Virus record (IMG/VR): IMGVR_UViG_3300035156_000206
Coordinates: 227,968-291,967 of that record
DNA: 64,000 nucleotides
Reading direction: 5' to 3' (one strand)
The notes under the pieces were generated by a model. That model saw only the letters and a program-made list of their open reading frames with translations, had not been told where the DNA came from and did not search any database. Position numbers and translations under genes: made by a program. Numbering within the stretch: the first letter of the stretch is position 1; every line of letters starts with the position of its first letter. Shown piece after piece: positions 29-43,035 of the stretch.

Positions 29-154
29 CGATGTCGATACTGCCGAGGACTTGCGGTACCTGCGCACCATTATGACGATTGTAAACTCAAACCCGCCGAA
101 CGTACGGCGGTCGTGATAAATACCACGATCAATACTAGAACGGAGCAAAAATTA

Positions 155-3487
<3,333 letters not shown>

Positions 3488-7578: not shown

Positions 7579-8727
7579 TTATTTCCTTTGGATAAGTTTG
7601 GTTTGCAACTCTTTTTGCATCTCGGCTACGCGGTTTGACACGAGCTTACGATGTTTGGCACCTTCTTCGGTGATCTGGAATACTCCCTGGATCCCCGAAA
7701 TAAGTTCTGATTGGACATGCTCGATCGTTGTTAGATCGATAATGCCACGCTGACTTTGTTGCGCAACCGCAATGGACGTCTGCTTCAGCTTGGTAGCTGT
7801 ATCGCGAGCCATTTGGTTGGTAAAGTCATTGATTTGGGTTGACAGCTGGGCACCACGAGCTTGCTCGTCTACCATCATCCCGACCATGAACTGACGCTTC
7901 CAGTTCGGGACAACGTGTGCCTTCACGAGCTTGAACTGCTCGATCAGGTGAACACCATTCTGTTGCATCAAGCGAATTGCCGGTGCCGTTTGATAGGCAG
8001 CCATTTTCAGGCGCTCGAAGTTCGATGCCTTCATGTCGAGACTTACCAAATAGTTCTTGGCATCATTGACTTGTTGGACATCGTAAGGATCTGGGTTGGG
8101 GCCAAGGCTGGCTACGAAGGCATCGGTCTCGACCTGCAGCTCTTCAATCGCCAAGCGGGAAGCAAGCACGAGCTTGTCCAGAGCATGGTACTGATCCATG
8201 TTGGCTTCGTACAGGTCTTCCATGATGTCGAGTCGCTTGCTGATGCCCGAGGAGAATACATCCACCTCATTGACGATCTTTTCCACCTGGGTGGTAGCCA
8301 AATCAAATTGGCCAACGACGCGATCTTTTGTATTGCGGAATTTGTCGAGCCAGCCACCAATGACAGGCAGGCGGCTCTTCTGGTTCAGCACACCAATGTT
8401 GATACCTTTGGCTGCGATGATGATGTTAGTGAGCTTGTCACCAACAAAGTCCAAATCGCTGGACTTGCTGTGTTGCAGCATATTGTCTGCCATATCGGCA
8501 ATACGATCCTGCACATCATCACCGAACGCTACCAGAGCCGTAGGATCTACCTTCACCAGCTGATCCTTGAGCTTACGGATCTCGGCCATTCCTTCTGAGC
8601 TGTACTTGGCCATCGCCGTGTTTAATACAGAAGGACTACCGTTCAGCGAAGCATTTGTCGCTACAGCGGATGAGCCAAAAGGACTCGATTCGCTTGTGCG
8701 CGCAGACTGCGATTTGAACTGTTTCAT
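7579..8727 (-). CDS. telA: toxic anion resistance protein TelA
   Basis: Coiled-coil with AFGDDVQ, QTAPAIRLMQ and VPNWKRQ motifs; start at 8727. Confidence 0.85.
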   Translation of the reverse strand: MKQFKSQSARTSESSPFGSSAVATNASLNGSPSVLNTAMAKYSSEGMAEIRKLKDQLVKVDPTALVAFGDDVQDRIADMADNMLQHSKSSDLDFVGDKLTNIIIAAKGINIGVLNQKSRLPVIGGWLDKFRNTKDRVVGQFDLATTQVEKIVNEVDVFSSGISKRLDIMEDLYEANMDQYHALDKLVLASRLAIEELQVETDAFVASLGPNPDPYDVQQVNDAKNYLVSLDMKASNFERLKMAAYQTAPAIRLMQQNGVHLIEQFKLVKAHVVPNWKRQFMVGMMVDEQARGAQLSTQINDFTNQMARDTATKLKQTSIAVAQQSQRGIIDLTTIEHVQSELISGIQGVFQITEEGAKHRKLVSNRVAEMQKELQTKLIQRK

Positions 8728-8814
8728 TCGATCTCCCTTAACAATGACATCATTATACGGATGGGCTATACGAAAAGTCAACAAATATTTCTGCTAACTT
8801 TGAAACTGAAGGGT

Positions 8815-10059
8815 CTAAGCCAGAATTTGTTTCAGGGAGGTGAACGATTGCTCGATTTCAGCCAATACACCTTTCTTGCGAATGAACTGCTTATCCATCT
8901 GCAAGTCGGCGATCTTGGATGCCGAGGATGTCTCGAGAGCGGACATCAACACAACACATTGCTGTTTCCACGTGGGAACAACTGTCTGCGATATTTGTTG
9001 AATTCGATCTGCCTTGTCTTTACTTGCCATCTGCAACATTCGGATCGCAGGTGCATTCAGAATAACTGAGTGGGCAAGCTTTTCAAGTTCAGTGACCTTA
9101 CGCTCAAACCGAGTAACACTGTCACGGAAGTATGCCAAGTCCTGCCCAGCAAAAATGTTGGTAGTATCGACTGTCTTTTCCATTTCAGGAAGAGTCTTGG
9201 TGAGGTGACGTTCTGTAATGATCTTGCCAGCAATAACGTGCAGGTTCAATAAGGTGAAGTTGTCACGATTGTTCTTGAATACATCATCAAACGAATCAAT
9301 CAATTTGAGCAGTTCAGACACGCTAGACTTCAGTTCCACAACCAGCACGTCCACTCTATTGATATTGTTTTGGAACTTCTGTACAACTTCGTTAACGGAA
9401 GGTACGTACGCTCCTTGACGGATCCAACGCATCAGACCAGATTCTTGTGGAGTGGTGAGGATGGTGGTGAGCTCTTTGGATGCTTCCATTGTGATCAATA
9501 GGTCTTGGATCTTGTCATTGACCTGGGAAGTCTTACCAGATGTCTGCTCTTTGATGATCCCATCGATCAGCGTACCAAACCGAACGCGCTGCTCGTCGGA
9601 ATAATGCAACACGTAGGATGCGTCTGCAATGTCGGCAGCATCAACGATGTTACGTACTCGAGCTATGTCTTTGTGGGAGAGTTTAACACAAAGTGGGTGG
9701 TCGCGGTAGAATGGATCCACCACATCAACACCAACAGCTTTACTCGGGAAAAGTACTTTCCCGGCAGTGCCCTTGGGAGCAGGCTTAGGTATAGGTATAG
9801 GTATAGGTATAGGGGATTTTGGTGCCCGTTCGAGTTCCATCCGCTTCTGCAATTCCTCCCGGACCATGCGCCGTTGTTCTTCGAGGCGCAGATGTTCTTC
9901 GTTGGTCATTACCGATTTGGTAGGATCGTCTACAACAGGAGAAGGCTTTGGTGCTGGAGTAGGCATAGTCCGCGCAGGAGCGGACTTGAATACCTGCTTC
10001 GGTTTGTTTGGTTGTGCCATGGTCGTTACTTTATTTGGGAAGAGCGGTTTCGGTTCCAT
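8815..10059 (-). CDS. TelA-like paralogue with Pro-rich N-terminus
   Basis: APAIRMLQ and VVPTWKQQ match the adjacent TelA; (GGTATA)n repeat encodes PIPIPIP. Confidence 0.7.
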   Translation of the reverse strand: MEPKPLFPNKVTTMAQPNKPKQVFKSAPARTMPTPAPKPSPVVDDPTKSVMTNEEHLRLEEQRRMVREELQKRMELERAPKSPIPIPIPIPKPAPKGTAGKVLFPSKAVGVDVVDPFYRDHPLCVKLSHKDIARVRNIVDAADIADASYVLHYSDEQRVRFGTLIDGIIKEQTSGKTSQVNDKIQDLLITMEASKELTTILTTPQESGLMRWIRQGAYVPSVNEVVQKFQNNINRVDVLVVELKSSVSELLKLIDSFDDVFKNNRDNFTLLNLHVIAGKIITERHLTKTLPEMEKTVDTTNIFAGQDLAYFRDSVTRFERKVTELEKLAHSVILNAPAIRMLQMASKDKADRIQQISQTVVPTWKQQCVVLMSALETSSASKIADLQMDKQFIRKKGVLAEIEQSFTSLKQILA

Positions 10060-10613: not shown

Positions 10614-10946
10614 TTAGCAGGTGAGAATGTTCTTCCCAATGCCTGGCATCATCGGTGGATTGACGTCTACTGGATGATACGGAAACTGTGGGTACACCGG
10701 GAGGACATTAGGTGATGGTGCCTGCTTGTCAATCTCCTTCATCAGGCGCTGAAGCGCTTCATTAGGAGACACCTTAACTGTACCTGGTGCTACTACCGCT
10801 GCTGGCTTAGCCAATGGCGGTGTTGTTTTTGTCAACACAGTGTCCAAATGTTGACAAATCGATAACCATTGCTCTGGTGTAGGGACTTTGTCCCCCGCCA
10901 GCTCAACGAAACCTGTTAACCAATATGCGAATTGTTCTGGGTTCAT
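10614..10946 (-). CDS. small phage protein (MNPEQFAYWLTGFVEL type)
   Basis: ATGA overlap with the ligase stop codon. Confidence 0.75.
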   Translation of the reverse strand: MNPEQFAYWLTGFVELAGDKVPTPEQWLSICQHLDTVLTKTTPPLAKPAAVVAPGTVKVSPNEALQRLMKEIDKQAPSPNVLPVYPQFPYHPVDVNPPMMPGIGKNILTC

Positions 10947-11980
10947 GCTATTTCCTTTCCGATGTTTGCGATATACCAATCTTTACCTACACGATTGACC
11001 TTGCCCATTACTTCTTTTGCGACCAGACCACTTGCTTCAATGGTATCCAGTTCTTCTTTGATGACGTCCGAACCCAGGAACTTCAGGAATGTTCCGATGT
11101 TCTTCACATCATCAGCATCTAGGCCCATTTCGACCACTTTGCCCTTCATCTGCATCAGACGGTTCTCCGTAACCACTTTGGTTGCGAATTCGTTGATGCT
11201 GTTGACCTTCTCCACATCCACCTCAGCCAGAACTTTGACCTTCGATGCCGAGTGCTTCTCGCCTTTTACTTTGAACAGAAGTCCACGCTGGTAAAAACGC
11301 TCGTCTGTGTCTACACAGCTCCAAACAATGCCTTCACCTACGCCATTGTCAACGCCAAAGTGCTTAGCTACTGGGCACTCTGTTTCGACCTCAATTGTCA
11401 GTTCAACCAGTTTGTTTTGGCTCAGCTCAGGGTTGGTGAAATCAATGTCCATCTCCCAAGTTGGGAATTCGAAGATTGAGTACACGTTCTGTGAACTGAA
11501 TGCTTCGCCCATTGCTGAGAAGAGTTCGTCCTGGATGTTTTTGCCTAGGTAGCGAGTTGTTTCGCCCGTGCCGTGACGGATACCAAAGATCACAAACATC
11601 TTTGGTAAGCCACTGATCCCAACACCCTTTTGGATGTTGCCACCGCACCACTCACCGTAGATCGTGAGGGTTTCATCAGTACCCAGGCCGGCCAGTTGGC
11701 GGATATTGCCGAAAGCCAGTTCCCACATTGCTGTACGGGTGTGGACATACTGAGCAAACCCTGCATTGTCACTTTCAGGTGTGATGATGCGCTCACGCGA
11801 TTGAGCCCAAAGTACACCGGACTCTTGCACCACTGACGAATTGGTTCCGTGCAGCTTAACAGTTCCACGGAACTTCAGCACCGGAGCTGGGATTGTGTGA
11901 TAGTTGCACATATCACGGACGTGTTTGACGATCGAGCGAAATTGGTCGATCGATGGGTATTTAATGTGTTCCATGGTCAT
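10943..11980 (-). CDS. Rnl2-family RNA ligase
   Basis: Motif I TVKLHGTN, IYGEWCGGNIQKG, FVIFGI, GEGIVW, FKVKGEKH. Confidence 0.88.
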   Translation of the reverse strand: MTMEHIKYPSIDQFRSIVKHVRDMCNYHTIPAPVLKFRGTVKLHGTNSSVVQESGVLWAQSRERIITPESDNAGFAQYVHTRTAMWELAFGNIRQLAGLGTDETLTIYGEWCGGNIQKGVGISGLPKMFVIFGIRHGTGETTRYLGKNIQDELFSAMGEAFSSQNVYSIFEFPTWEMDIDFTNPELSQNKLVELTIEVETECPVAKHFGVDNGVGEGIVWSCVDTDERFYQRGLLFKVKGEKHSASKVKVLAEVDVEKVNSINEFATKVVTENRLMQMKGKVVEMGLDADDVKNIGTFLKFLGSDVIKEELDTIEASGLVAKEVMGKVNRVGKDWYIANIGKEIA

Positions 11981-12177
11981 TCTCCTTGTTTGGGGACCCA
12001 ATAAAATATGGGATTGTTTCGTTTGTGTTGGCGTTGCCGCTCTTCTACGCCGTACCAATAGGTGCCGCTCCATTCCATCAGAAAGCTCACCACTCCACAC
12101 CGCAGTTGCATCACTACAATATAATGCCCCGGGTTGATTGGTGTTCTTTCGTATATCCCAAAGCGGCGGTTACTCAT
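11977..12177 (-). CDS. hypothetical protein
   Basis: ATGA-coupled on both sides. Confidence 0.6.
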   Translation of the reverse strand: MSNRRFGIYERTPINPGHYIVVMQLRCGVVSFLMEWSGTYWYGVEERQRQHKRNNPIFYWVPKQGE

Positions 12178-30414: not shown

Positions 30415-30442
30415 TTTGTTCTGGCTTTTGTAATATGCTATG

Positions 30443-30527
30443 CTGTGTAGGTAGGGATCGAACCTACAGTTGGCAATTAAGCCGTCTCATTAACAGTGAG
30501 GTGCCTTACCGTTCGGCGCACTACACA
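30443..30527 (-). tRNA. tRNA-Asn(GTT) with long variable arm, no encoded CCA
   Basis: Loop CTGTTAA; variable arm GGC-TTAATT-GCC; acceptor stem extended to a 15 bp inverted repeat. Confidence 0.75.
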
Positions 30528-35181: not shown

Positions 35182-35255
35182 TGGGTTGAGAGACGGGAAT
35201 CGAACCCGCGCTACTTCCGTCACAAGGAAGGGCTCTACCATTGAGCTACTCCCAA
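35182..35255 (-). tRNA. tRNA-His(GTG)
   Basis: Loop TTGTGAC, C discriminator plus CCA. Confidence 0.9.
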
Positions 35256-35754: not shown

Positions 35755-35841
35755 TGGAGTAGGGGACAGGATTTGAACCTGCGGTGCGCTTTCGCATCGA
35801 GATTTGCAGTCTCGCTCCTTCGACCACTCAGACACCCCTAC
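35755..35841 (-). tRNA. tRNA-Cys(GCA) with long variable arm
   Basis: Loop CTGCAAA; variable arm ATGC-GAAA-GCGC; TCCA end. Confidence 0.85.
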
Positions 35842-38784: not shown

Positions 38785-38867
38785 TGGTGCCCCCGCAGAG
38801 ACTCGAACTCTGAAAGGCGCGGCTTCTGAGGCCGCTAGCTGTACCAATTTGCATTAGCCACAGGGGC
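38785..38867 (-). tRNA. tRNA-Leu(CAG) with short variable loop and enlarged D loop
   Basis: Loop CTCAGAA, ACCA end. Confidence 0.85.
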
Positions 38868-39234: not shown

Positions 39235-39321
39235 TGGTGCGAGTAGAGGGACTCGAACCCCCACGATATTCCTACCGCCAGGACCTAAACCTGGTGCGTC
39301 TACCAATTTCGCCATACTCGC
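39235..39321 (-). tRNA. tRNA-Leu(TAG)
   Basis: Loop TTTAGGT, long variable arm, ACCA end. Confidence 0.93.
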
Positions 39322-39341
39322 ATGCTTCAAACAACAAAATC

Positions 39342-39450
39342 TGGGGGGAGTGAGGGGAGTCGAACCCCATGATGGAACGTCATGCCTGGACAACCCGACG
39401 CCTGGTGGTGTCCCCATCTTCCCGCATACTGAGCCCGCACTGCACTCCCC
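39342..39450 (-). ncRNA. tRNA-like RNA with 8-bp acceptor stem and no anticodon loop
   Basis: GGGGAGTG/CACTCCCC, T loop GGGG-TTCGACT-CCCC. Confidence 0.55.
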
Positions 39451-39459
39451 ATTGTTACA

Positions 39460-39606
39460 TTTGTAGCAACCGGTACTGATCTCCGGTTTGTCCCCAAGCC
39501 GTATGAGGCCGCTTACAAGGGGTTCGGGCATTACGTAGAACAAGGTGGCCACACCTACGCAACCTCTTTTATGTTCCCGCGCATCAGTCTGCGCATTTGC
39601 TACAAA
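39460..39606 (-). ncRNA. 147-nt stem-closed ncRNA
   Basis: TTTGTAGCAA/TTGCTACAAA closing stem with four internal hairpins. Confidence 0.55.
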
Positions 39607-39609
39607 ATC

Positions 39610-39780
39610 TTCGCTTTAGGCTTTCACCTACCCTGGCCTTGAGGCTGCGTATGAAGAGTACCGATCCATGCCGATACCTCCGAGCAATCGCTAAGTTGAT
39701 TCACTCTTCGGTTTCCCGAACGCTGATCAAGCGCTGCCTAGAAGGGCCGTATAATAATTTACAACCCCACGTACAATTGC
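39610..39780 (-). ncRNA. putative structured ncRNA
   Basis: TCGG-GAAA-CCGA, GAAGAGT/ACTCTTC, TAGG-TGAAAG-CCTA. Confidence 0.4.
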
Positions 39781-39785
39781 GAAAC

Positions 39786-39915
39786 TGGTGCCGGCGGCTG
39801 GAATCGAACCCGCAAGAACTGCTTTTCACACAGTCTCATCACCCTGAGCATCAACTGGGACTAGTACTCCAGTCTATCTCTTATCGATGCTACCCTTTTG
39901 CATGGGGCGTCCGGC
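39786..39915 (-). ncRNA. tRNA-ended RNA with enlarged interior
   Basis: GCCGG/CCGGC-A-CCA, TTCGATT T loop, AGCATCGA/TTGATGCT arm. Confidence 0.55.
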
Positions 39916-39921
39916 ATATCT

Positions 39922-39999
39922 TGGTGGATGCGAAGGGAATCGAACCCTCATGCCCCGCTACTACCGTTTGTCCAGGATGACCTAGGCGGGAGCGCACCC
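39922..39999 (-). ncRNA. tRNA-like RNA without canonical D or anticodon arms
   Basis: GGGTGCG/CGCATCC-A-CCA, GAGGG-TTCGATT-CCCTT, CCCGC/GCGGG. Confidence 0.55.
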
Positions 40000-40006
40000 A
40001 ATGTTA

Positions 40007-40082
40007 TGGTGGAGGATGCCGGGATCGAACCGGCCACCTGATGCTTGCAAAGCACCCGCTCTCCCAAATGAGCTAATCCCCC
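40007..40082 (-). tRNA. tRNA-Ala(TGC)
   Basis: Loop TTTGCAA, G3-U70 pair, ACCA end. Confidence 0.95.
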
Positions 40083-40087
40083 AAATT

Positions 40088-40366
40088 CTATACTACTTGA
40101 ATCTTTACCTTCTTGATCTCGATCGTGTCGAGTGCCTTAAGCTGTTCATCAAGGGAAGCAAGTTTTTCTTTCTTTTGTGCTCGTGAAAAGAAGCTACTCT
40201 TCGTTTCCACCAGCTTTTTCTTCTCGTACTCGAGGTTGCTACGAACCTGATTGATGTTTCGTACCACTGATGGTCTGTGAGCGTACAACTTATCAGGCGC
40301 AGTCCACATGTTCAGAATCGAACCATCAGGGAAAACCCCAACATACATCTCGTCATCAATATTCAA
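40088..40366 (-). CDS. hypothetical coiled-coil protein
   Basis: TTG start after GGAG. Confidence 0.65.
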   Translation of the reverse strand: MNIDDEMYVGVFPDGSILNMWTAPDKLYAHRPSVVRNINQVRSNLEYEKKKLVETKSSFFSRAQKKEKLASLDEQLKALDTIEIKKVKIQVV

Positions 40367-40399
40367 GGTCTTCTCCAAGTTCTTAATGAGACATCCTAT

Positions 40400-40477
40400 C
40401 GAACAAAGAGGAATCGAACCTCTTGAGCCCAACCGCGGATGTGGAGAACGTACCCAACTGCTTCCGTTACTTTGCTC
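40400..40477 (-). pseudogene. degenerate tRNA
   Basis: AGAGG-TTCGATT-CCTCT T arm and GAGCAA/TTGTTC stem only. Confidence 0.4.
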
Positions 40478-40588
40478 TCTTCCTAGGTGCTTCCGGCGAT
40501 ATTGAAGTCTCGGCCGGTACCAGCCTTCCTTCTCGACGTGCCATCTTCAATCTAGTCGCCCAGTGTTTCACGTTAAGGGTGTCTCATT

Positions 40589-40788
40589 AAAAACTCTTGT
40601 TACAGTAACCATGCCAGGCAGGGTAATGCTCCCCGAACTCCGCGCGCAAAAGGTGGAGTCAACATCTGTGATACTAACCACTTACAGGTACTTGCTAGGT
40701 TTACTAATTGGCGGCATAGGGGCCCCTACTACCAACTTTCACTTCGTTTTCGCTATCCATGTTTAGGCTACTGAAACAAGAACTCTTT
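40589..40788 (-). ncRNA. 200-nt stem-closed ncRNA
   Basis: Imperfect closing helix of about 22 bp (AAAGAGTTCTTGTTTCAGTAGCC with GGTTACTGTAACAAGAGTTTTT). Confidence 0.5.
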
Positions 40789-40789
40789 A

Positions 40790-40868
40790 TGTGAGACCAG
40801 GCGGGATTCGAACCCACGGCCCTCCGCCATCACTGGCGGTGCTCATCCCACTCGAGCTCACCGGTCCC
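40790..40868 (-). ncRNA. tRNA body whose anticodon loop is a GNRA tetraloop
   Basis: Normal D and T arms, 8-bp acceptor stem, CCGCCA-GTGA-TGGCGG. Confidence 0.65.
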
Positions 40869-40879
40869 CCATTATTCTT

Positions 40880-40955
40880 TGGAGGGGCGGGGTGGAATCG
40901 AACCACCGACCTCCTGGATTAACCCTGGCGCTCTCTCCCCCGAGCTTGCCGCCCC
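40880..40955 (-). tRNA. non-canonical tRNA with 6-nt anticodon loop GTTAAT
   Basis: GGGGCGG/CCGCCCC-T-CCA, D and T arms intact; identity not assignable. Confidence 0.5.
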
Positions 40956-40961
40956 ACAACT

Positions 40962-41036
40962 TGGTGGACAGTGTAGGGATCGAACCTACGACCAATGCCT
41001 TGTAAGGGCACCGCTCTACCGCTGAGCTAACCGTCC
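40962..41036 (-). tRNA. tRNA-Val(TAC)
   Basis: Loop CTTACAA, ACCA end. Confidence 0.93.
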
Positions 41037-41096
41037 GTATTTCTTACTACTTGTTCATTTTACTGCTGATGTTCTCAAAAGACAACATCTAAATTC

Positions 41097-41172
41097 TGGT
41101 AGTTAGAACAGGGCTCGAACCTGTGACCTGTGGTTTATCGAACCACTGCTCTACCAACTGAGCTATCTAACT
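41097..41172 (-). tRNA. tRNA-Ile(GAT), C33 variant
   Basis: Loop TCGATAA, ACCA end. Confidence 0.88.
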
Positions 41173-41176
41173 AAAC

Positions 41177-41250
41177 TGGTGTTGTGTTCAGGAGTTTAAC
41201 CTGAGTCTCTCCCAGGAAGAGGGAACATCCTAACACTAGACGAACACAAC
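41177..41250 (-). tRNA. tRNA-Glu(TTC), atypical loop
   Basis: Loop TCTTCCT, T loop TTAAACT, ACCA end. Confidence 0.7.
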
Positions 41251-41272
41251 GATGAAACGGTACAACAAAATC

Positions 41273-41348
41273 TGGGTGCGTCCCCGAGGAGTTGAACCTC
41301 GCTTAAGCTCTCTATACGTAGCCTGCCCTAGCACTAGACGAAAGACGC
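41273..41348 (-). ncRNA. Glu-type tRNA body with 10-nt anticodon loop
   Basis: D arm GTCTAGTGCTAGG as in the neighbouring tRNA; loop ACGTATAGAG. Confidence 0.5.
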
Positions 41349-41352
41349 GGTG

Positions 41353-41541
41353 TTACTCTGCCGAAAACCTTGATGCCAGGATGATGATTCTCTCTTCACC
41401 ACCATCTGTTTGGATAATGACACCATTACCCATTACACCCAGTATTTCGTACTTCTTTCCTATTGTCAACATAGGGTGAAACTTTTTAGCATCACACAAT
41501 GATTGTAGAATCATACTGCATCCATTCAAACAAGACAACAT
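41353..41541 (-). CDS. hypothetical protein
   Basis: ORF track; start uncertain. Confidence 0.5.
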   Translation of the reverse strand: MLSCLNGCSMILQSLCDAKKFHPMLTIGKKYEILGVMGNGVIIQTDGGEERIIILASRFSAE

Positions 41542-41549
41542 TTAAAATC

Positions 41550-41627
41550 TGGTATGGATAACGGAATTCGAATCCGTGTTTGCAGAGTGAAAGTCTGCCG
41601 TCCTAGTCCTATCTAGACGATATCCAT
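41550..41627 (-). tRNA. tRNA-Glu(TTC)
   Basis: Loop CTTTCAC, ACCA end. Confidence 0.92.
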
Positions 41628-41633
41628 ATTGTA

Positions 41634-41888
41634 CTACTTTTTAACCTTCTCGTACTGCACACCATCAATCACCACTACTGCTTTCGGTGACTTTTCTTGT
41701 GTGACCGTTGATGTTGAACTATTCGGACATCGAACAACCGTGATTGCATTTCCGTTTGTGTTCCTCATGTATGTAAAGGAACAATCGTTCAAGTGCTCGG
41801 GCACCGAATACCGCGTCTTCGAATCTTCGGTTGTTGCTTCACATCCTGCTACCAACACGCATAATACCACTGCCGCAACCTTGTTCAT
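41634..41888 (-). CDS. putative lipoprotein
   Basis: Lipobox LVAGC; VVRCPNSSTST. Confidence 0.75.
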   Translation of the reverse strand: MNKVAAVVLCVLVAGCEATTEDSKTRYSVPEHLNDCSFTYMRNTNGNAITVVRCPNSSTSTVTQEKSPKAVVVIDGVQYEKVKK

Positions 41889-42334
41889 TTGATACCTTGT
41901 TGTGTAAACTTCTGGTCACTTAGGTCGATCTTAACGATCTTGCTTTCGTCCCTTGTCTCTGCATCAATGAAAATGGTTCGTAACACAACCCATTCCCCAA
42001 CAAATGAAACTGGAACAATAAGGTAATCAATTACAAACTCGACCCTTCCAATCTTTTCACCATTAACATATCGGGTATGAAAGTAAAGCAACTCACACAA
42101 CCCATAATTAACAATGCGCTTTAGCAGCTTTCCTAGACGATCTGCATTGTCTTTGGTAATCCGCTCCTTCATCCTATCAATCGCATGGCTCGACAGCTTT
42201 AGCTTGAACCGCGTGTGATAATCAATCAGGTCAAATACTTCAAGCAGTTTCTGGTTCAATGGAACCATCAAATGCCGGTTTAGTGTTTTATTGTCGTATT
42301 CCATGTGGTGTATTCTACAACATGTTCTATTCAA
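41885..42334 (-). CDS. hypothetical protein, possible RelE/DUF4258-like fold
   Basis: LSSHAIDRMKER and VVLRTIF motifs; start probably the later MEYDN. Confidence 0.55.
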   Translation of the reverse strand: MNRTCCRIHHMEYDNKTLNRHLMVPLNQKLLEVFDLIDYHTRFKLKLSSHAIDRMKERITKDNADRLGKLLKRIVNYGLCELLYFHTRYVNGEKIGRVEFVIDYLIVPVSFVGEWVVLRTIFIDAETRDESKIVKIDLSDQKFTQQGIK

Positions 42335-42354
42335 AAATCAACAACTATTTGTTC

Positions 42355-42439
42355 TGGTGGATCATGATGGAGTCGAACCACCTATGACTAGCATGCTTGC
42401 GGGTTACAGCCGCACCCCTTACCGTTCGGGCAACGATCC
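42355..42439 (-). tRNA. tRNA-Tyr(GTA)
   Basis: Loop CTGTAAC, long variable arm. Confidence 0.92.
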
Positions 42440-42446
42440 AATGTTC

Positions 42447-42531
42447 TGGTGGGTTGGGTAGGGATCGAACCTACTTACCATAAGGAACGGGGGTTACAGC
42501 CCCGCAGCACGACCTTTGTGCCATCCAACCC
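42447..42531 (-). tRNA. tRNA-Tyr(GTA)
   Basis: Loop CTGTAAC, long variable arm. Confidence 0.9.
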
Positions 42532-42539
42532 GGTATTCT

Positions 42540-42758
42540 TTACTTCAACTTCTTGATGTCCATTTTCAGGTCAGCGATCTTTCGCATGGTGCCTGGTACG
42601 TCAAATGCTGGACCCTTACCCTTTTGTTGCAAAGCGAGCTTCATTTCTGACTCGAGCTGTACAACACGGGCTTCCAGGTTTGCAATCTTCTTATCGTTCT
42701 TGGCCATCATAAACTCCTGTTGTTGTGTTAATGAATCAACATGATACATCTTAAACAC
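42540..42758 (-). CDS. small coiled-coil protein
   Basis: AGGAG RBS before MMAK. Confidence 0.65.
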   Translation of the reverse strand: MFKMYHVDSLTQQQEFMMAKNDKKIANLEARVVQLESEMKLALQQKGKGPAFDVPGTMRKIADLKMDIKKLK

Positions 42759-42778
42759 GTTTACTGCAACTTCTAATT

Positions 42779-42853
42779 TGGTAGGGCCGGAGGAGCTCGA
42801 ATCCTCTTTTGCTGGTTAAAAGCCAGCTACTTCACCGTTAAAGTTTCAACCCC
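42779..42853 (-). tRNA. tRNA-Lys(TTT)
   Basis: Loop CTTTTAA, ACCA end. Confidence 0.92.
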
Positions 42854-42867
42854 AAAATTCGGATAAC

Positions 42868-42899
42868 AAAAAAGAGCACCGTCTTTCGAGGGTGCTCTT
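42868..42899 (-). terminator. attenuator 2 terminator
   Basis: AAGAGCACC-loop-GGTGCTCTT plus T tract, 15 nt before tRNA-Lys. Confidence 0.92.
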
Positions 42900-42921
42900 G
42901 TCGTTGGAATAAAATGGAGGT

Positions 42922-43035
42922 TTACTTCTTAGACACTCCACCTTTGACAAAAGCACACACGCGTTTATATTGGGCAGCATACGCTACTTCAATAATAAAC
43001 ATCTCGTGTTGTTCTAGTTGGCAAAGGGTAAACAT
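42922..43035 (-). CDS. 37-aa leader peptide MFTLCQLEQHEMFIIEVAYAAQYKRVCAFVKGGVSKK (not in ORF track)
   Basis: GTGCTTTTGTC (42946-42956) pairs 11 of 11 with GACAAGAGCAC, which overlaps the terminator 5' arm. Confidence 0.75.
   Translation of the reverse strand: MFTLCQLEQHEMFIIEVAYAAQYKRVCAFVKGGVSKK

What the first reader, a model, noticed from the sequence alone, without database searches (positions are those of the whole stretch)
40790..40868. Anticodon-less tRNA: anticodon loop replaced by a GNRA tetraloop
D and T arms and an 8-bp acceptor stem are intact, but the anticodon arm is CCGCCA-GTGA-TGGCGG. A stable tetraloop looks selected rather than decayed. It could act as an uncleavable decoy for tRNA nucleases, synthetases or EF-Tu (inference).
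Basis: seen in the sequence. Interest (0 to 1): 0.6.

Follow-up and report, generated by a model that had tools for sequence, protein, structure and literature searches.

The report
Phage tRNA look-alike without an anticodon
A giant soil-crust phage carries, inside its long row of tRNA genes, a perfectly folded tRNA-shaped gene whose anticodon loop is closed into a hairpin, so it cannot read codons; it is real, but whether it is a kept tRNA mimic or a young dead copy cannot be decided from sequence.

Summary
On the minus strand, 40868 to 40790, lies a cloverleaf with all 23 base pairs intact: an 8-bp acceptor stem, D arm, T arm with a UUCGAAU loop, and a 16-nt anticodon arm, CCGCCA-GUGA-UGGCGG. 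It sits in a 13-kb tRNA array of an uncultivated ~292-kb jumbo phage from a biocrust metagenome. An independent assembly reproduces it. It is not a standard tRNA: Rfam's tRNA model gives under 10.2 bits against a threshold of 29. The linker has 3 nt, the variable region 6 nt, and the tail reads ACA, not CCA. The 8th acceptor pair is G-1:C73, the tRNA-His hallmark. GUGA equals a His anticodon GUG plus A37, so losing one loop base yields a GNRA loop without selection for it. The adjacent gene (40955-40880) has the same odd geometry. That gene's positional counterpart in the only relative found keeps a tRNA shape, with compensatory acceptor changes and a different, non-canonical loop. The candidate itself is absent from that relative. 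No RNA data exist. Anticodon arms of 16 nt or fewer recur at roughly 1% in phage tRNA arrays. Verdict: a non-decoding, tRNA-derived RNA gene. A kept tRNA-body mimic or processing module (about 0.5) is only slightly more likely than a young pseudogene (about 0.4). The decoy idea is untested.

The parts
40790..40868 (-). The candidate: a tRNA-like gene without an anticodon loop (G-1 at 40868, C73 at 40793, tail ACA at 40792-40790)
   Evidence: Sequence. Cloverleaf is the minimum-energy fold. 23 of 23 pairs standard. Rfam tRNA score under 10.2 bits.
40861..40868 (-). Acceptor 5' strand GGGACCGG; the first G is position -1
   Evidence: Pairs with 40793-40800 (CUGGUCUC) for 8 bp including G-1:C73, read from the sequence.
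40793..40800 (-). Acceptor 3' strand ending in C73
   Evidence: Among the tRNAs and tRNA-likes listed, a C at position 73 occurs otherwise only in the tRNA-His.
40841..40860 (-). 3-nt linker UGA plus D arm (GCUC, 9-nt loop with GGG, GAGC)
   Evidence: The linker is one base longer than the canonical two.
40824..40839 (-). 16-nt anticodon arm: 6 bp plus tetraloop GUGA (loop at 40830-40833)
   Evidence: A canonical arm has 17 nt.
40818..40823 (-). 6-nt variable region AGGGCC
40801..40817 (-). T arm GUGGG-UUCGAAU-CCCGC
40880..40955 (-). Neighbouring look-alike: 7-bp acceptor, 3-nt linker CAA, 16-nt arm CCAGGG-UUAA-UCCAGG with one A.A mismatch, U73, CCA
   Evidence: ARAGORN 'tRNA-??? (ta)'. Best hit of the candidate's covariance model inside this phage, 43.7 bits. 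Positional counterpart at L103:10851-10928.
40962..41036 (-). tRNA-Val(UAC), directly upstream on the same strand
   Evidence: 70.6 bits.
41057..41085 (-). Promoter-like site TTGTCT-17-TAAAAT upstream of tRNA-Val. No terminator-like site lies between Val, the neighbour and the candidate.
   Evidence: This is a consensus match only, and the number of such sites is not significant.
40589..40787 (-). Long hairpin RNA domain closed by a 22-bp stem, starting 5 nt after C73
   Evidence: plus reading of the stem with its G.U pairs.
40385..40588 (-). Second structured RNA domain with an internal T-arm, conserved in the relative
   Evidence: The L103:10942-11172 counterpart folds with z = -4.15.

Best explanation
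It is a real gene for a non-decoding, tRNA-derived RNA.

Shown:
- It has a complete tRNA body: acceptor, D and T helices, a canonical T loop, and GG in the D loop.
- Its anticodon arm is one base short and closes into 6 bp plus GUGA, so no anticodon is presented.
- It lies on the same strand as the tRNA array, 11 nt after a look-alike and 93 nt after tRNA-Val, with no terminator-like site between them.

Inferred:
- It derives from a GUG-type (His-like) tRNA by loss of one loop base.
- It is transcribed with tRNA-Val.
- RNase P cuts it so as to leave G-1.
- Because it lacks CCA, an RNase Z-type enzyme cuts it right after C73.
- It may then receive CCA from the host enzyme or from the phage's own CCA-adding enzyme.

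Proposed role: it is kept for its tRNA-shaped body, not for translation. It would serve either as a processing module that sets the 5' end of the structured RNA starting 5 nt downstream, or as a competitor for proteins that read the tRNA body and acceptor end.
For: - All 23 pairs are intact despite three length anomalies. Under random substitution the chance of keeping every pair is 0.27 after 2 changes, 0.02 after 6 and 0.002 after 10.
- Clearly decayed copies in the same array look different: 41275-41348 has a broken arm and 41177-41250 has an altered T loop.
- The adjacent gene shares the rare geometry of a 3-nt linker and a 16-nt arm. Only 1 of 730 ARAGORN tRNAs in 80 other phage loci had a 6-nt loop.
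- That neighbour's positional counterpart in the relative keeps 22 of 22 pairs. Five of its 7 acceptor pairs are changed on both sides, its D arm is conserved, and its anticodon loop is unrelated. So a tRNA-shaped RNA without a conserved anticodon has persisted at this locus.
- In both phages a non-canonical tRNA-like gene directly precedes a structured RNA.
- Other phages carry well-folded tRNA-likes with hairpin anticodon arms: L070:6670-6768, L072:405-477, L189:1074-1143 and the homologous pair L165/L180.
- The phage encodes a CCA-adding enzyme.
Against: - The candidate itself has no counterpart in the only relative or in IMG/VR, JGI metagenome contigs or cultured phages.
- The tail CACA differs by one base from the CCCA of His genes, which looks like relaxed constraint.
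- Ordinary tRNAs of other huge phages match the candidate's model as well as the neighbour does (46.9 and 44.5 bits against 43.7). Common descent of the two odd genes is therefore not shown by score.
- There is no expression data.
Confidence: 0.5

Rival explanations
1. It is a young pseudogene. A spare copy of a GUG-type tRNA became redundant because the phage has another tRNA-His gene. It lost one anticodon-loop base and the first C of CCA, and has not yet had time to decay. It has no function, although it is probably still transcribed and trimmed.
For: - It is absent from the only relative.
- It fails the tRNA model.
- Its 3' tail is ACA, while most genes in the array encode CCA.
- The array holds other degenerate copies.
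- GUGA follows automatically from GUG plus A37.
- A second, canonical tRNA-His(GUG) lies at 35182-35255.
- With 2 or fewer later substitutions, intact helices are unremarkable (P = 0.27 at 2 substitutions).
Against: - There are three separate length changes (linker +1, loop -1, variable region +1) but no helix defect in 23 pairs.
- The neighbour has the same rare geometry, and the neighbour's lineage has been kept tRNA-shaped across two diverged phages.
Confidence: 0.4
2. It is a histidine-accepting, non-ribosomal tRNA mimic. HisRS reads G-1:C73 and charges it. The charged RNA then titrates HisRS or EF-Tu, or donates histidine to a non-ribosomal transferase.
For: - G-1:C73 is present. From general knowledge, this is the main HisRS identity element in bacteria, and minihelices carrying it are charged.
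- The gene sits where related jumbo phages have tRNA-His after tRNA-Val.
Against: - CCA is not encoded.
- The look-alike neighbour and its counterpart have different discriminators (U73, and G73 paired to C-1). No conserved acceptor identity exists in the group.
- No phage HisRS or Thg1 gene was found.
- No candidate transferase was identified.
- Sequence similarity does not single out tRNA-His.
Confidence: 0.06
3. It is a working decoder with a 6-nt loop (AGUGAU) that still reads His codons or promotes frameshifting.
For: GUG is still present in the loop. ARAGORN accepts 6-nt loops as tRNAs, as it does for the neighbour.
Against: - A32:U38 closes the loop to a GNRA tetraloop in the predicted fold.
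- U33 is missing.
- A canonical tRNA-His exists in the same array.
- The body has further anomalies, and Rfam scores it under 10.2 bits.
Confidence: 0.04

Closest known systems
Bacterial or phage tRNA-His (Rfam RF00005 tRNA)
   Same: Cloverleaf with a canonical T loop. An extra G-1 pairs with C73 to give an 8-bp acceptor helix. GUG is followed by A in the loop. It sits after tRNA-Val, where XacN1 and RAS14 have tRNA-His.
   Different: The anticodon arm has 16 nt instead of 17, with no U33 and the loop closed to GUGA. The linker has 3 nt and the variable region 6 nt. The tail is ACA, not CCA. Rfam tRNA score is under 10.2 bits against a threshold of 29. It is not closer in sequence to tRNA-His than to other tRNAs.
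tRNA pseudogenes in phage tRNA arrays (for example the one reported for XacN1, PMC5852040)
   Same: A tRNA-derived gene inside an array that cannot decode, and that is missing from the nearest relative.
   Different: No helix mismatch and no loss of T-loop or D-loop motifs. It is paired with a neighbour of the same unusual geometry.
mascRNA / MEN-beta tRNA-like RNAs, and gammaherpesvirus 68 tRNA-like RNAs joined to hairpins (from general knowledge)
   Same: tRNA-shaped RNAs with a shortened or non-functional anticodon arm. Cells treat them as tRNAs for end processing, and they mark the ends of a neighbouring RNA. Here a long hairpin starts 5 nt downstream.
   Different: Those are eukaryotic or animal-virus systems. 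The Rfam mascRNA model gives only 14.5 bits against 42.5. Processing has not been shown here.
Phage T4 stable RNAs C and D (species 1 and 2) in the T4 tRNA cluster (from general knowledge)
   Same: Small stable RNAs of unknown function, encoded among phage tRNA genes and matured from the same transcripts.
   Different: They are longer and not full cloverleaves. No sequence relation was tested.
Phage tRNAs with anticodon-loop changes that escape host anticodon nucleases (PMC10264068; T5 tRNAs against PARIS and retrons, PMC11464382, PMC11555353)
   Same: A phage tRNA-array gene with an altered anticodon loop.
   Different: Those tRNAs keep a 7-nt loop and still decode. They replace cut host tRNAs rather than acting as decoys.
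tmRNA tRNA-like domain, and the tRNA-like module of YrlA (Y RNA) (PMC4201824)
   Same: An acceptor/T-arm 'top half' mimic without an anticodon.
   Different: The tmRNA model matches only the T arm (10.2 bits). YrlA scores 14.2 bits and its partner Ro/TROVE protein is absent from the phage record. Both lack a full D arm and anticodon arm cloverleaf.

Membership tests
tRNA (Rfam RF00005) | Covariance-model score at or above the gathering threshold of 29 bits | tested here: not met
   No tRNA hit was reported. The best hit in the clan is a 10.2-bit tmRNA T-arm match. ARAGORN finds it only at -ps80.
tRNA (Rfam RF00005) | Four-helix cloverleaf with a T loop of UUCRANY type and GG in the D loop | tested here: met
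   Minimum-energy fold. 23 of 23 pairs standard. T loop is UUCGAAU.
tRNA (Rfam RF00005) | 7-nt anticodon loop with U33 and a purine at 37 | tested here: not met
   The arm is CCGCCA-GUGA-UGGCGG: 16 nt, with no U33.
tRNA (Rfam RF00005) | 3' CCA end and aminoacylation | not testable with these tools
   The gene encodes ACA after C73. No RNA runs hold the sequence.
tRNA-His | G-1 paired with C73 | tested here: met
   G40868 pairs with C40793. C73 occurs otherwise only in the array's tRNA-His.
tRNA-His | GUG anticodon presented in a 7-nt loop | tested here: not met
   GUG lies inside the tetraloop GUGA.
tRNA-His | Closest sequence relatives are tRNA-His genes | tested here: inconclusive
   Identity to the RAS14 tRNA-His is 0.66, while tRNA-Val and tRNA-Ile reach 0.68. 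Model scores: XacN1 His 30.1, RAS14 His 23.6, RAS14 Val 37.7. Synteny (Val followed by His) does fit.
tRNA pseudogene | Loss of decoding ability | tested here: met
   There is no anticodon loop.
tRNA pseudogene | Signs of neutral decay: helix mismatches, lost loop motifs | tested here: not met
   23 of 23 pairs and canonical loops. Contrast 41275-41348.
tRNA pseudogene | Not conserved in relatives | tested here: met
   No match in L103, L250 or L252. Only one relative lineage is available.
mascRNA-type tRNA-like RNA (RF01684) | Model score at or above 42.5 bits | tested here: not met
   14.5 bits.
YrlA / bacterial Y RNA | Partner Ro60 (TROVE) gene present, and model score at or above 69 bits | tested here: not met
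   No TROVE domain in the 292-kb record. Model score is 14.2 bits.
Nuclease-resistant decoding phage tRNAs | Keeps a 7-nt loop and a usable anticodon with point changes at the cleavage site | tested here: not met
   The loop is closed to 4 nt. Family definition taken from PMC10264068.

The most novel reading that the evidence does not exclude
Huge phages keep a so far undescribed class of non-decoding tRNA-body mimics in their tRNA arrays. These are tRNA-shaped RNAs whose anticodon arm is just a capped hairpin. They would act either as competitive decoys for host tRNA-directed defence or maturation enzymes, or as RNase P/Z-recognised modules that shape neighbouring non-coding RNAs. This candidate and its neighbour would be two members.
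Probability: 0.2. Interest if true: 0.75.

Novelty: new variant of a known kind. Interest (0 to 1): 0.45.

Why it matters
Phage tRNA genes are now seen as weapons in the conflict over host tRNA-cutting defences. If some array members are kept as tRNA-shaped RNAs that never decode, phage tRNA counts and codon-supply arguments are partly misread. A second mode of action, mimicry or RNA processing, would then have to be added. The candidate is small, easy to express and easy to delete, so the question can be tested directly. If it is only a young pseudogene, it still shows that standard tRNA finders miss several tRNA-derived genes in this array, and that such arrays turn over quickly.

Tried and rejected
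1. Assembly error: rejected. An independent contig is identical.

2. Y RNA / Ro system: rejected. There is no TROVE gene and only a weak model hit.

3. A link to a phage HisRS or Thg1: none found.

4. Search for close relatives:
   - A D-arm 19-mer in IMG/VR gave only two chance hits in coding DNA.
   - The neighbour's T-arm 28-mer gave none.
   - A family pattern gave none in IMG/VR and only unrelated hits in JGI metagenome contigs.
   - A motif from the downstream RNA gave none.
   - Cultured phages gave only generic tRNA matches.
   - Protein-based locus searches in IMG/VR and in metagenome contigs gave none.
   - Only the word search with a neighbouring ORF found one relative lineage.

5. 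L103:11777-11849 as the orthologue. It also has G-1:C73 and CCA. Rejected: its arm has 17 nt with a 7-nt loop, its identity is in the noise, and the candidate's model does not hit it.

6. Proving that the candidate and its neighbour are duplicates by model score: not possible. Unrelated tRNAs score equally.

7. Expression and variation from public reads: there are no RNA runs. Other runs only matched conserved tRNAs of other organisms.

8. Relatives of other phages' anticodon-less elements among cultured phages: none useful.

9. Micro-diversity in the relative: the two samples are identical.

10. Base-rate checks. The 16-nt-arm pattern gave 3 viral stretches, against 119 for the 17-nt version. 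My crude classifier over 793 elements needed manual pruning. The resulting rate of about 1% is therefore rough.

Full report
**Where it is**

The window is the last 64 kb of a 291,967-bp IMG/VR virus record, estimated 84% complete. The record comes from a biocrust metagenome. Its genes mark it as a jumbo, contractile-tailed phage:
- family B DNA polymerase, topoisomerase II, NAD-dependent DNA ligase and tail sheath;
- a collagen-like tail fibre and an RNA ligase;
- a CCA-adding enzyme.

ARAGORN finds 29 tRNAs and a permuted tmRNA in the record. Twenty-three of the tRNAs are on the minus strand of the window between 30.3 and 43.8 kb. Rfam confirms most of them and adds a tRNA-Lys at 42782-42853.

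**The observation**

Read on the minus strand from 40868 to 40790, the sequence forms these parts:

| Part | Sequence | Coordinates |
|---|---|---|
| Acceptor helix, 8 bp | GGGACCGG / CUGGUCUC | 40868-40861 with 40800-40793 |
| Linker, 3 nt | UGA | 40860-40858 |
| D arm | GCUC / GAGC, 9-nt loop holding GGG | 40857-40841 |
| Single base | A | 40840 |
| Anticodon arm | CCGCCA-GUGA-UGGCGG | 40839-40824 |
| Variable region, 6 nt | AGGGCC | 40823-40818 |
| T arm | GUGGG-UUCGAAU-CCCGC | 40817-40801 |
| Tail | ACA | 40792-40790 |

RNAfold returns exactly this cloverleaf as the minimum-energy structure. All 23 pairs are standard, three of them G.U. A Logan contig from the source run covers 39286-43000 without any difference, so the short arm is not an assembly artefact.

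A simple scanner of my own looks for a T arm followed by a pairing acceptor. It finds 29 elements in the window, all inside the array and on the array's strand. Across the other 228 kb it finds the remaining array genes near the record's start plus four loose hits in coding DNA. The element is therefore a genuine tRNA-derived gene.

It is not a standard tRNA:
- Rfam's tRNA model gives less than 10.2 bits against a threshold of 29.
- ARAGORN sees it only at a relaxed threshold, and then with a mispaired 7-nt loop.

**What kind of tRNA it resembles**

- The eighth acceptor pair is G-1:C73. Among the tRNAs and tRNA-likes listed, a C at position 73 occurs otherwise only in the tRNA-His.
- The loop letters GUGA equal the His anticodon GUG plus A37. 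Ordinary His loops read CUGUGAA in phage XacN1 and UUGUGAC in this phage's own tRNA-His.
- In the jumbo phages XacN1 and RAS14 the gene order is Ile-Ala-Val-His-Ser. In the window, tRNA-Ile and tRNA-Val are followed by two odd genes, the neighbour (40955-40880) and the candidate.

These three points suggest a His-type origin, in which one base at position 32/33 was lost and A32 came to pair with U38.

The His origin is not proven:
- Pairwise identity to His genes (0.66) is no higher than to Val or Ile genes (0.68).
- A covariance model built from the candidate scores ordinary tRNAs of other huge phages highest: Ile(UAU) 46.9 bits and Val 44.5 bits.

**The neighbour and the only relative**

The gene directly upstream was called 'tRNA-??? 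(ta)' by ARAGORN. It has the same unusual geometry as the candidate:
- a 3-nt linker (CAA);
- the same D stem;
- a 16-nt anticodon arm, CCAGGG-UUAA-UCCAGG, with one A.A mismatch;
- U73 followed by CCA.

Inside this phage and its relative it is the best match to the candidate's model, at 43.7 bits. Since unrelated tRNAs score as high, shared descent rests only on adjacency and the shared rare features.

Such features are rare. In 80 other phage loci, ARAGORN called 730 tRNAs, and one had a 6-nt loop.

A word search with a neighbouring ORF found one relative, a 279-kb JGI contig. The ORF is 62% identical at protein level, and aligned stretches are 70-76% identical at DNA level. The gene order Lys-Tyr-ORF-Glu-Ile-Val is shared.

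Directly after tRNA-Val the relative has a counterpart of the neighbour (L103:10851-10928):
- the D arm is nearly the same;
- 22 of 22 pairs are intact;
- five of seven acceptor pairs are changed on both sides;
- it has a -1:73 pair (C:G);
- its loop is unrelated and non-canonical, ACAAUGG with C33.

So a tRNA-shaped RNA without a conserved anticodon has persisted at this place while the two phages diverged.

The candidate itself has no counterpart there. Another L103 element with G-1:C73 (11777-11849) proved to have a 17-nt arm and is not detectably related. About 40 kb around the relative's array holds no canonical tRNA-His.

**Surroundings**

- A promoter-like site lies upstream of tRNA-Val, and no terminator-like site separates Val, the neighbour and the candidate. 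This is a weak consensus scan.
- Five bases after C73 begins a ~200-nt domain closed by a 22-bp stem with several G.U pairs.
- A second domain follows, holding an internal T-arm. Its counterpart in the relative folds far better than shuffled sequence (z = -4.15) and also follows directly on a non-canonical tRNA-like gene.

The window holds further tRNA-like genes that ARAGORN misses:
- 39926-39999: acceptor, T arm and ACCA but no anticodon arm; it hits the tmRNA model at 26.6 bits.
- 38789-38867: matches the mascRNA model at 24.9 bits, below its 42.5-bit threshold.
- 41177-41250 and 41275-41348: two degenerate Glu-like copies.

**How common such genes are**

- A sequence pattern that fixes a 16-nt arm matched 3 IMG/VR stretches. 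The same pattern with a 17-nt arm matched 119.
- Among about 790 distinct tRNA-like elements in the fetched phage loci, roughly ten have arms of 16 nt or fewer. This is a crude classifier with manual pruning.
- Several of these are strikingly well formed:
  - L070:6670-6768, in a 416-kb phage, has 6 bp plus UCCG and a UUCG-capped hairpin inserted in the D loop (z = -2.9). It sits in a run of equally odd tRNA-likes.
  - L072:405-477 has the arm CCCGCA-UGAA-UGCGGG.
  - L189:1074-1143 has the arm CCGGC-CCUG-GCCGG.
  - L165:3747-3815 and L180:3929-3993 are homologous, with identical 3' halves but anticodon hairpins of 16 and 13 nt.
- I found no paper in the held library that describes such genes in phages.

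**Interpretation**

It is shown that the gene cannot decode. It is inferred that the gene is transcribed with its neighbours and trimmed like a tRNA.

Two readings remain nearly balanced.

*For a kept tRNA-body mimic or processing module:*
- The helices and loop motifs are perfect despite three length changes. Random substitution would break a pair quickly: the chance of keeping all 23 is 0.02 after six changes.
- The neighbour has the same geometry.
- The neighbour's lineage has persisted across two diverged phages.
- The arrangement of a tRNA-like gene followed by a structured RNA is conserved.
- Similar genes recur elsewhere.
- The lack of CCA fits cleavage by an RNase Z-type enzyme right after C73, which would free the downstream RNA. 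This last step is inference from general knowledge of RNase Z.

*For a young pseudogene:*
- The candidate is absent from the only relative.
- The tail looks like a damaged CCA.
- A second tRNA-His gene exists.
- Decayed copies lie nearby.
- The element was chosen because it looks intact, which biases the intactness argument.

A histidine-accepting mimic and a working 6-nt-loop decoder share the rest.

It fits enzymes that read the tRNA body or acceptor end better than it fits anticodon nucleases, because the loop no longer resembles their target.

**Limits**

Only one relative lineage exists in the searched collections. No RNA data exist. The host is unknown. The class-level counts are rough.

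Noticed in passing
window 40880-40955 (-); L103:10851-10928: The adjacent 'tRNA-??? (ta)' has a 16-nt anticodon arm (CCAGGG-UUAA-UCCAGG) and a 3-nt linker. Its positional counterpart in the relative keeps the tRNA shape with compensatory acceptor changes but has an unrelated loop, ACAAUGG.
   Followed up: yes
window 39926-39999 (-): A tRNA-like gene with acceptor stem, T arm and encoded ACCA, but one irregular arm in place of the D and anticodon arms. It hits the tmRNA model across its tRNA-like domain (26.6 bits, below threshold). ARAGORN does not call it.
   Followed up: partly
window 38789-38867 (-): An uncalled tRNA-like gene with a normal CAG (Leu) anticodon loop, a short variable region and an oversized D loop. 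It ends in ACCA.
   Followed up: partly
window 40385-40787 (-); L103:10942-11172: Two structured non-coding RNA domains lie directly after the candidate. The second has an internal T-arm and shared motifs such as GAAGCACCUAGGAAGA, and is conserved in the relative, where it folds with z = -4.15. It matches no Rfam family. The whole stretch of about 1.7 kb from tRNA-Val to tRNA-Leu seems to hold no protein gene.
   Followed up: partly
window 41177-41250 and 41275-41348 (-): Two degenerate Glu-like tRNA copies. One has an altered T loop (UUAAACU) and no GG in the D loop. The other has a broken anticodon arm. They show what decay looks like in this array.
   Followed up: partly
window 35182-35255 (-): The phage's canonical tRNA-His(GUG) has U at position -1 opposite C73, so no encoded G-1. 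No Thg1 or HisRS gene was found in the record.
   Followed up: partly
window 30442-30527 and 35755-35841 (-): tRNA-Asn(GUU) of 86 nt and tRNA-Cys(GCA) of 87 nt carry long variable arms, which is unusual for these amino acids.
   Followed up: no
window 42779-42853 (-): tRNA-Lys(UUU) is missed by default ARAGORN but scores 48.5 bits in Rfam. It is 97% identical to the relative's copy, the most conserved tRNA of the array.
   Followed up: partly
whole record 8327-9044 (outside the window): ARAGORN calls a permuted tmRNA with tag ANDSQFKVAAYA. A further T-arm plus acceptor element ending in ACCA lies beside it at 8327-8411.
   Followed up: no
L070:6524-6888 (416-kb IMG/VR phage): A run of very unusual tRNA-likes: anticodon or D arms extended by UUCG-capped hairpins, a 53-nt minihelix ending in ACCA (z = -4.0), and a tRNA-like with a large insertion (z = -3.2).
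   Followed up: partly
L165:3747-3815 and L180:3929-3993; L189:1074-1143; L072:405-477 and 770-844; L250:6055-6122: Further tRNA-shaped genes with hairpin or 6-nt anticodon arms in unrelated phage contigs. They include a homologous pair whose 3' halves are identical but whose anticodon hairpins differ in length.
   Followed up: partly
window 7579-10059 (-), 10943-12100 (-), 113-3487 (+): Two tellurite-resistance-like proteins, an RNA ligase (phrog_548) and a collagen-repeat tail fibre lie in the same window.
   Followed up: no
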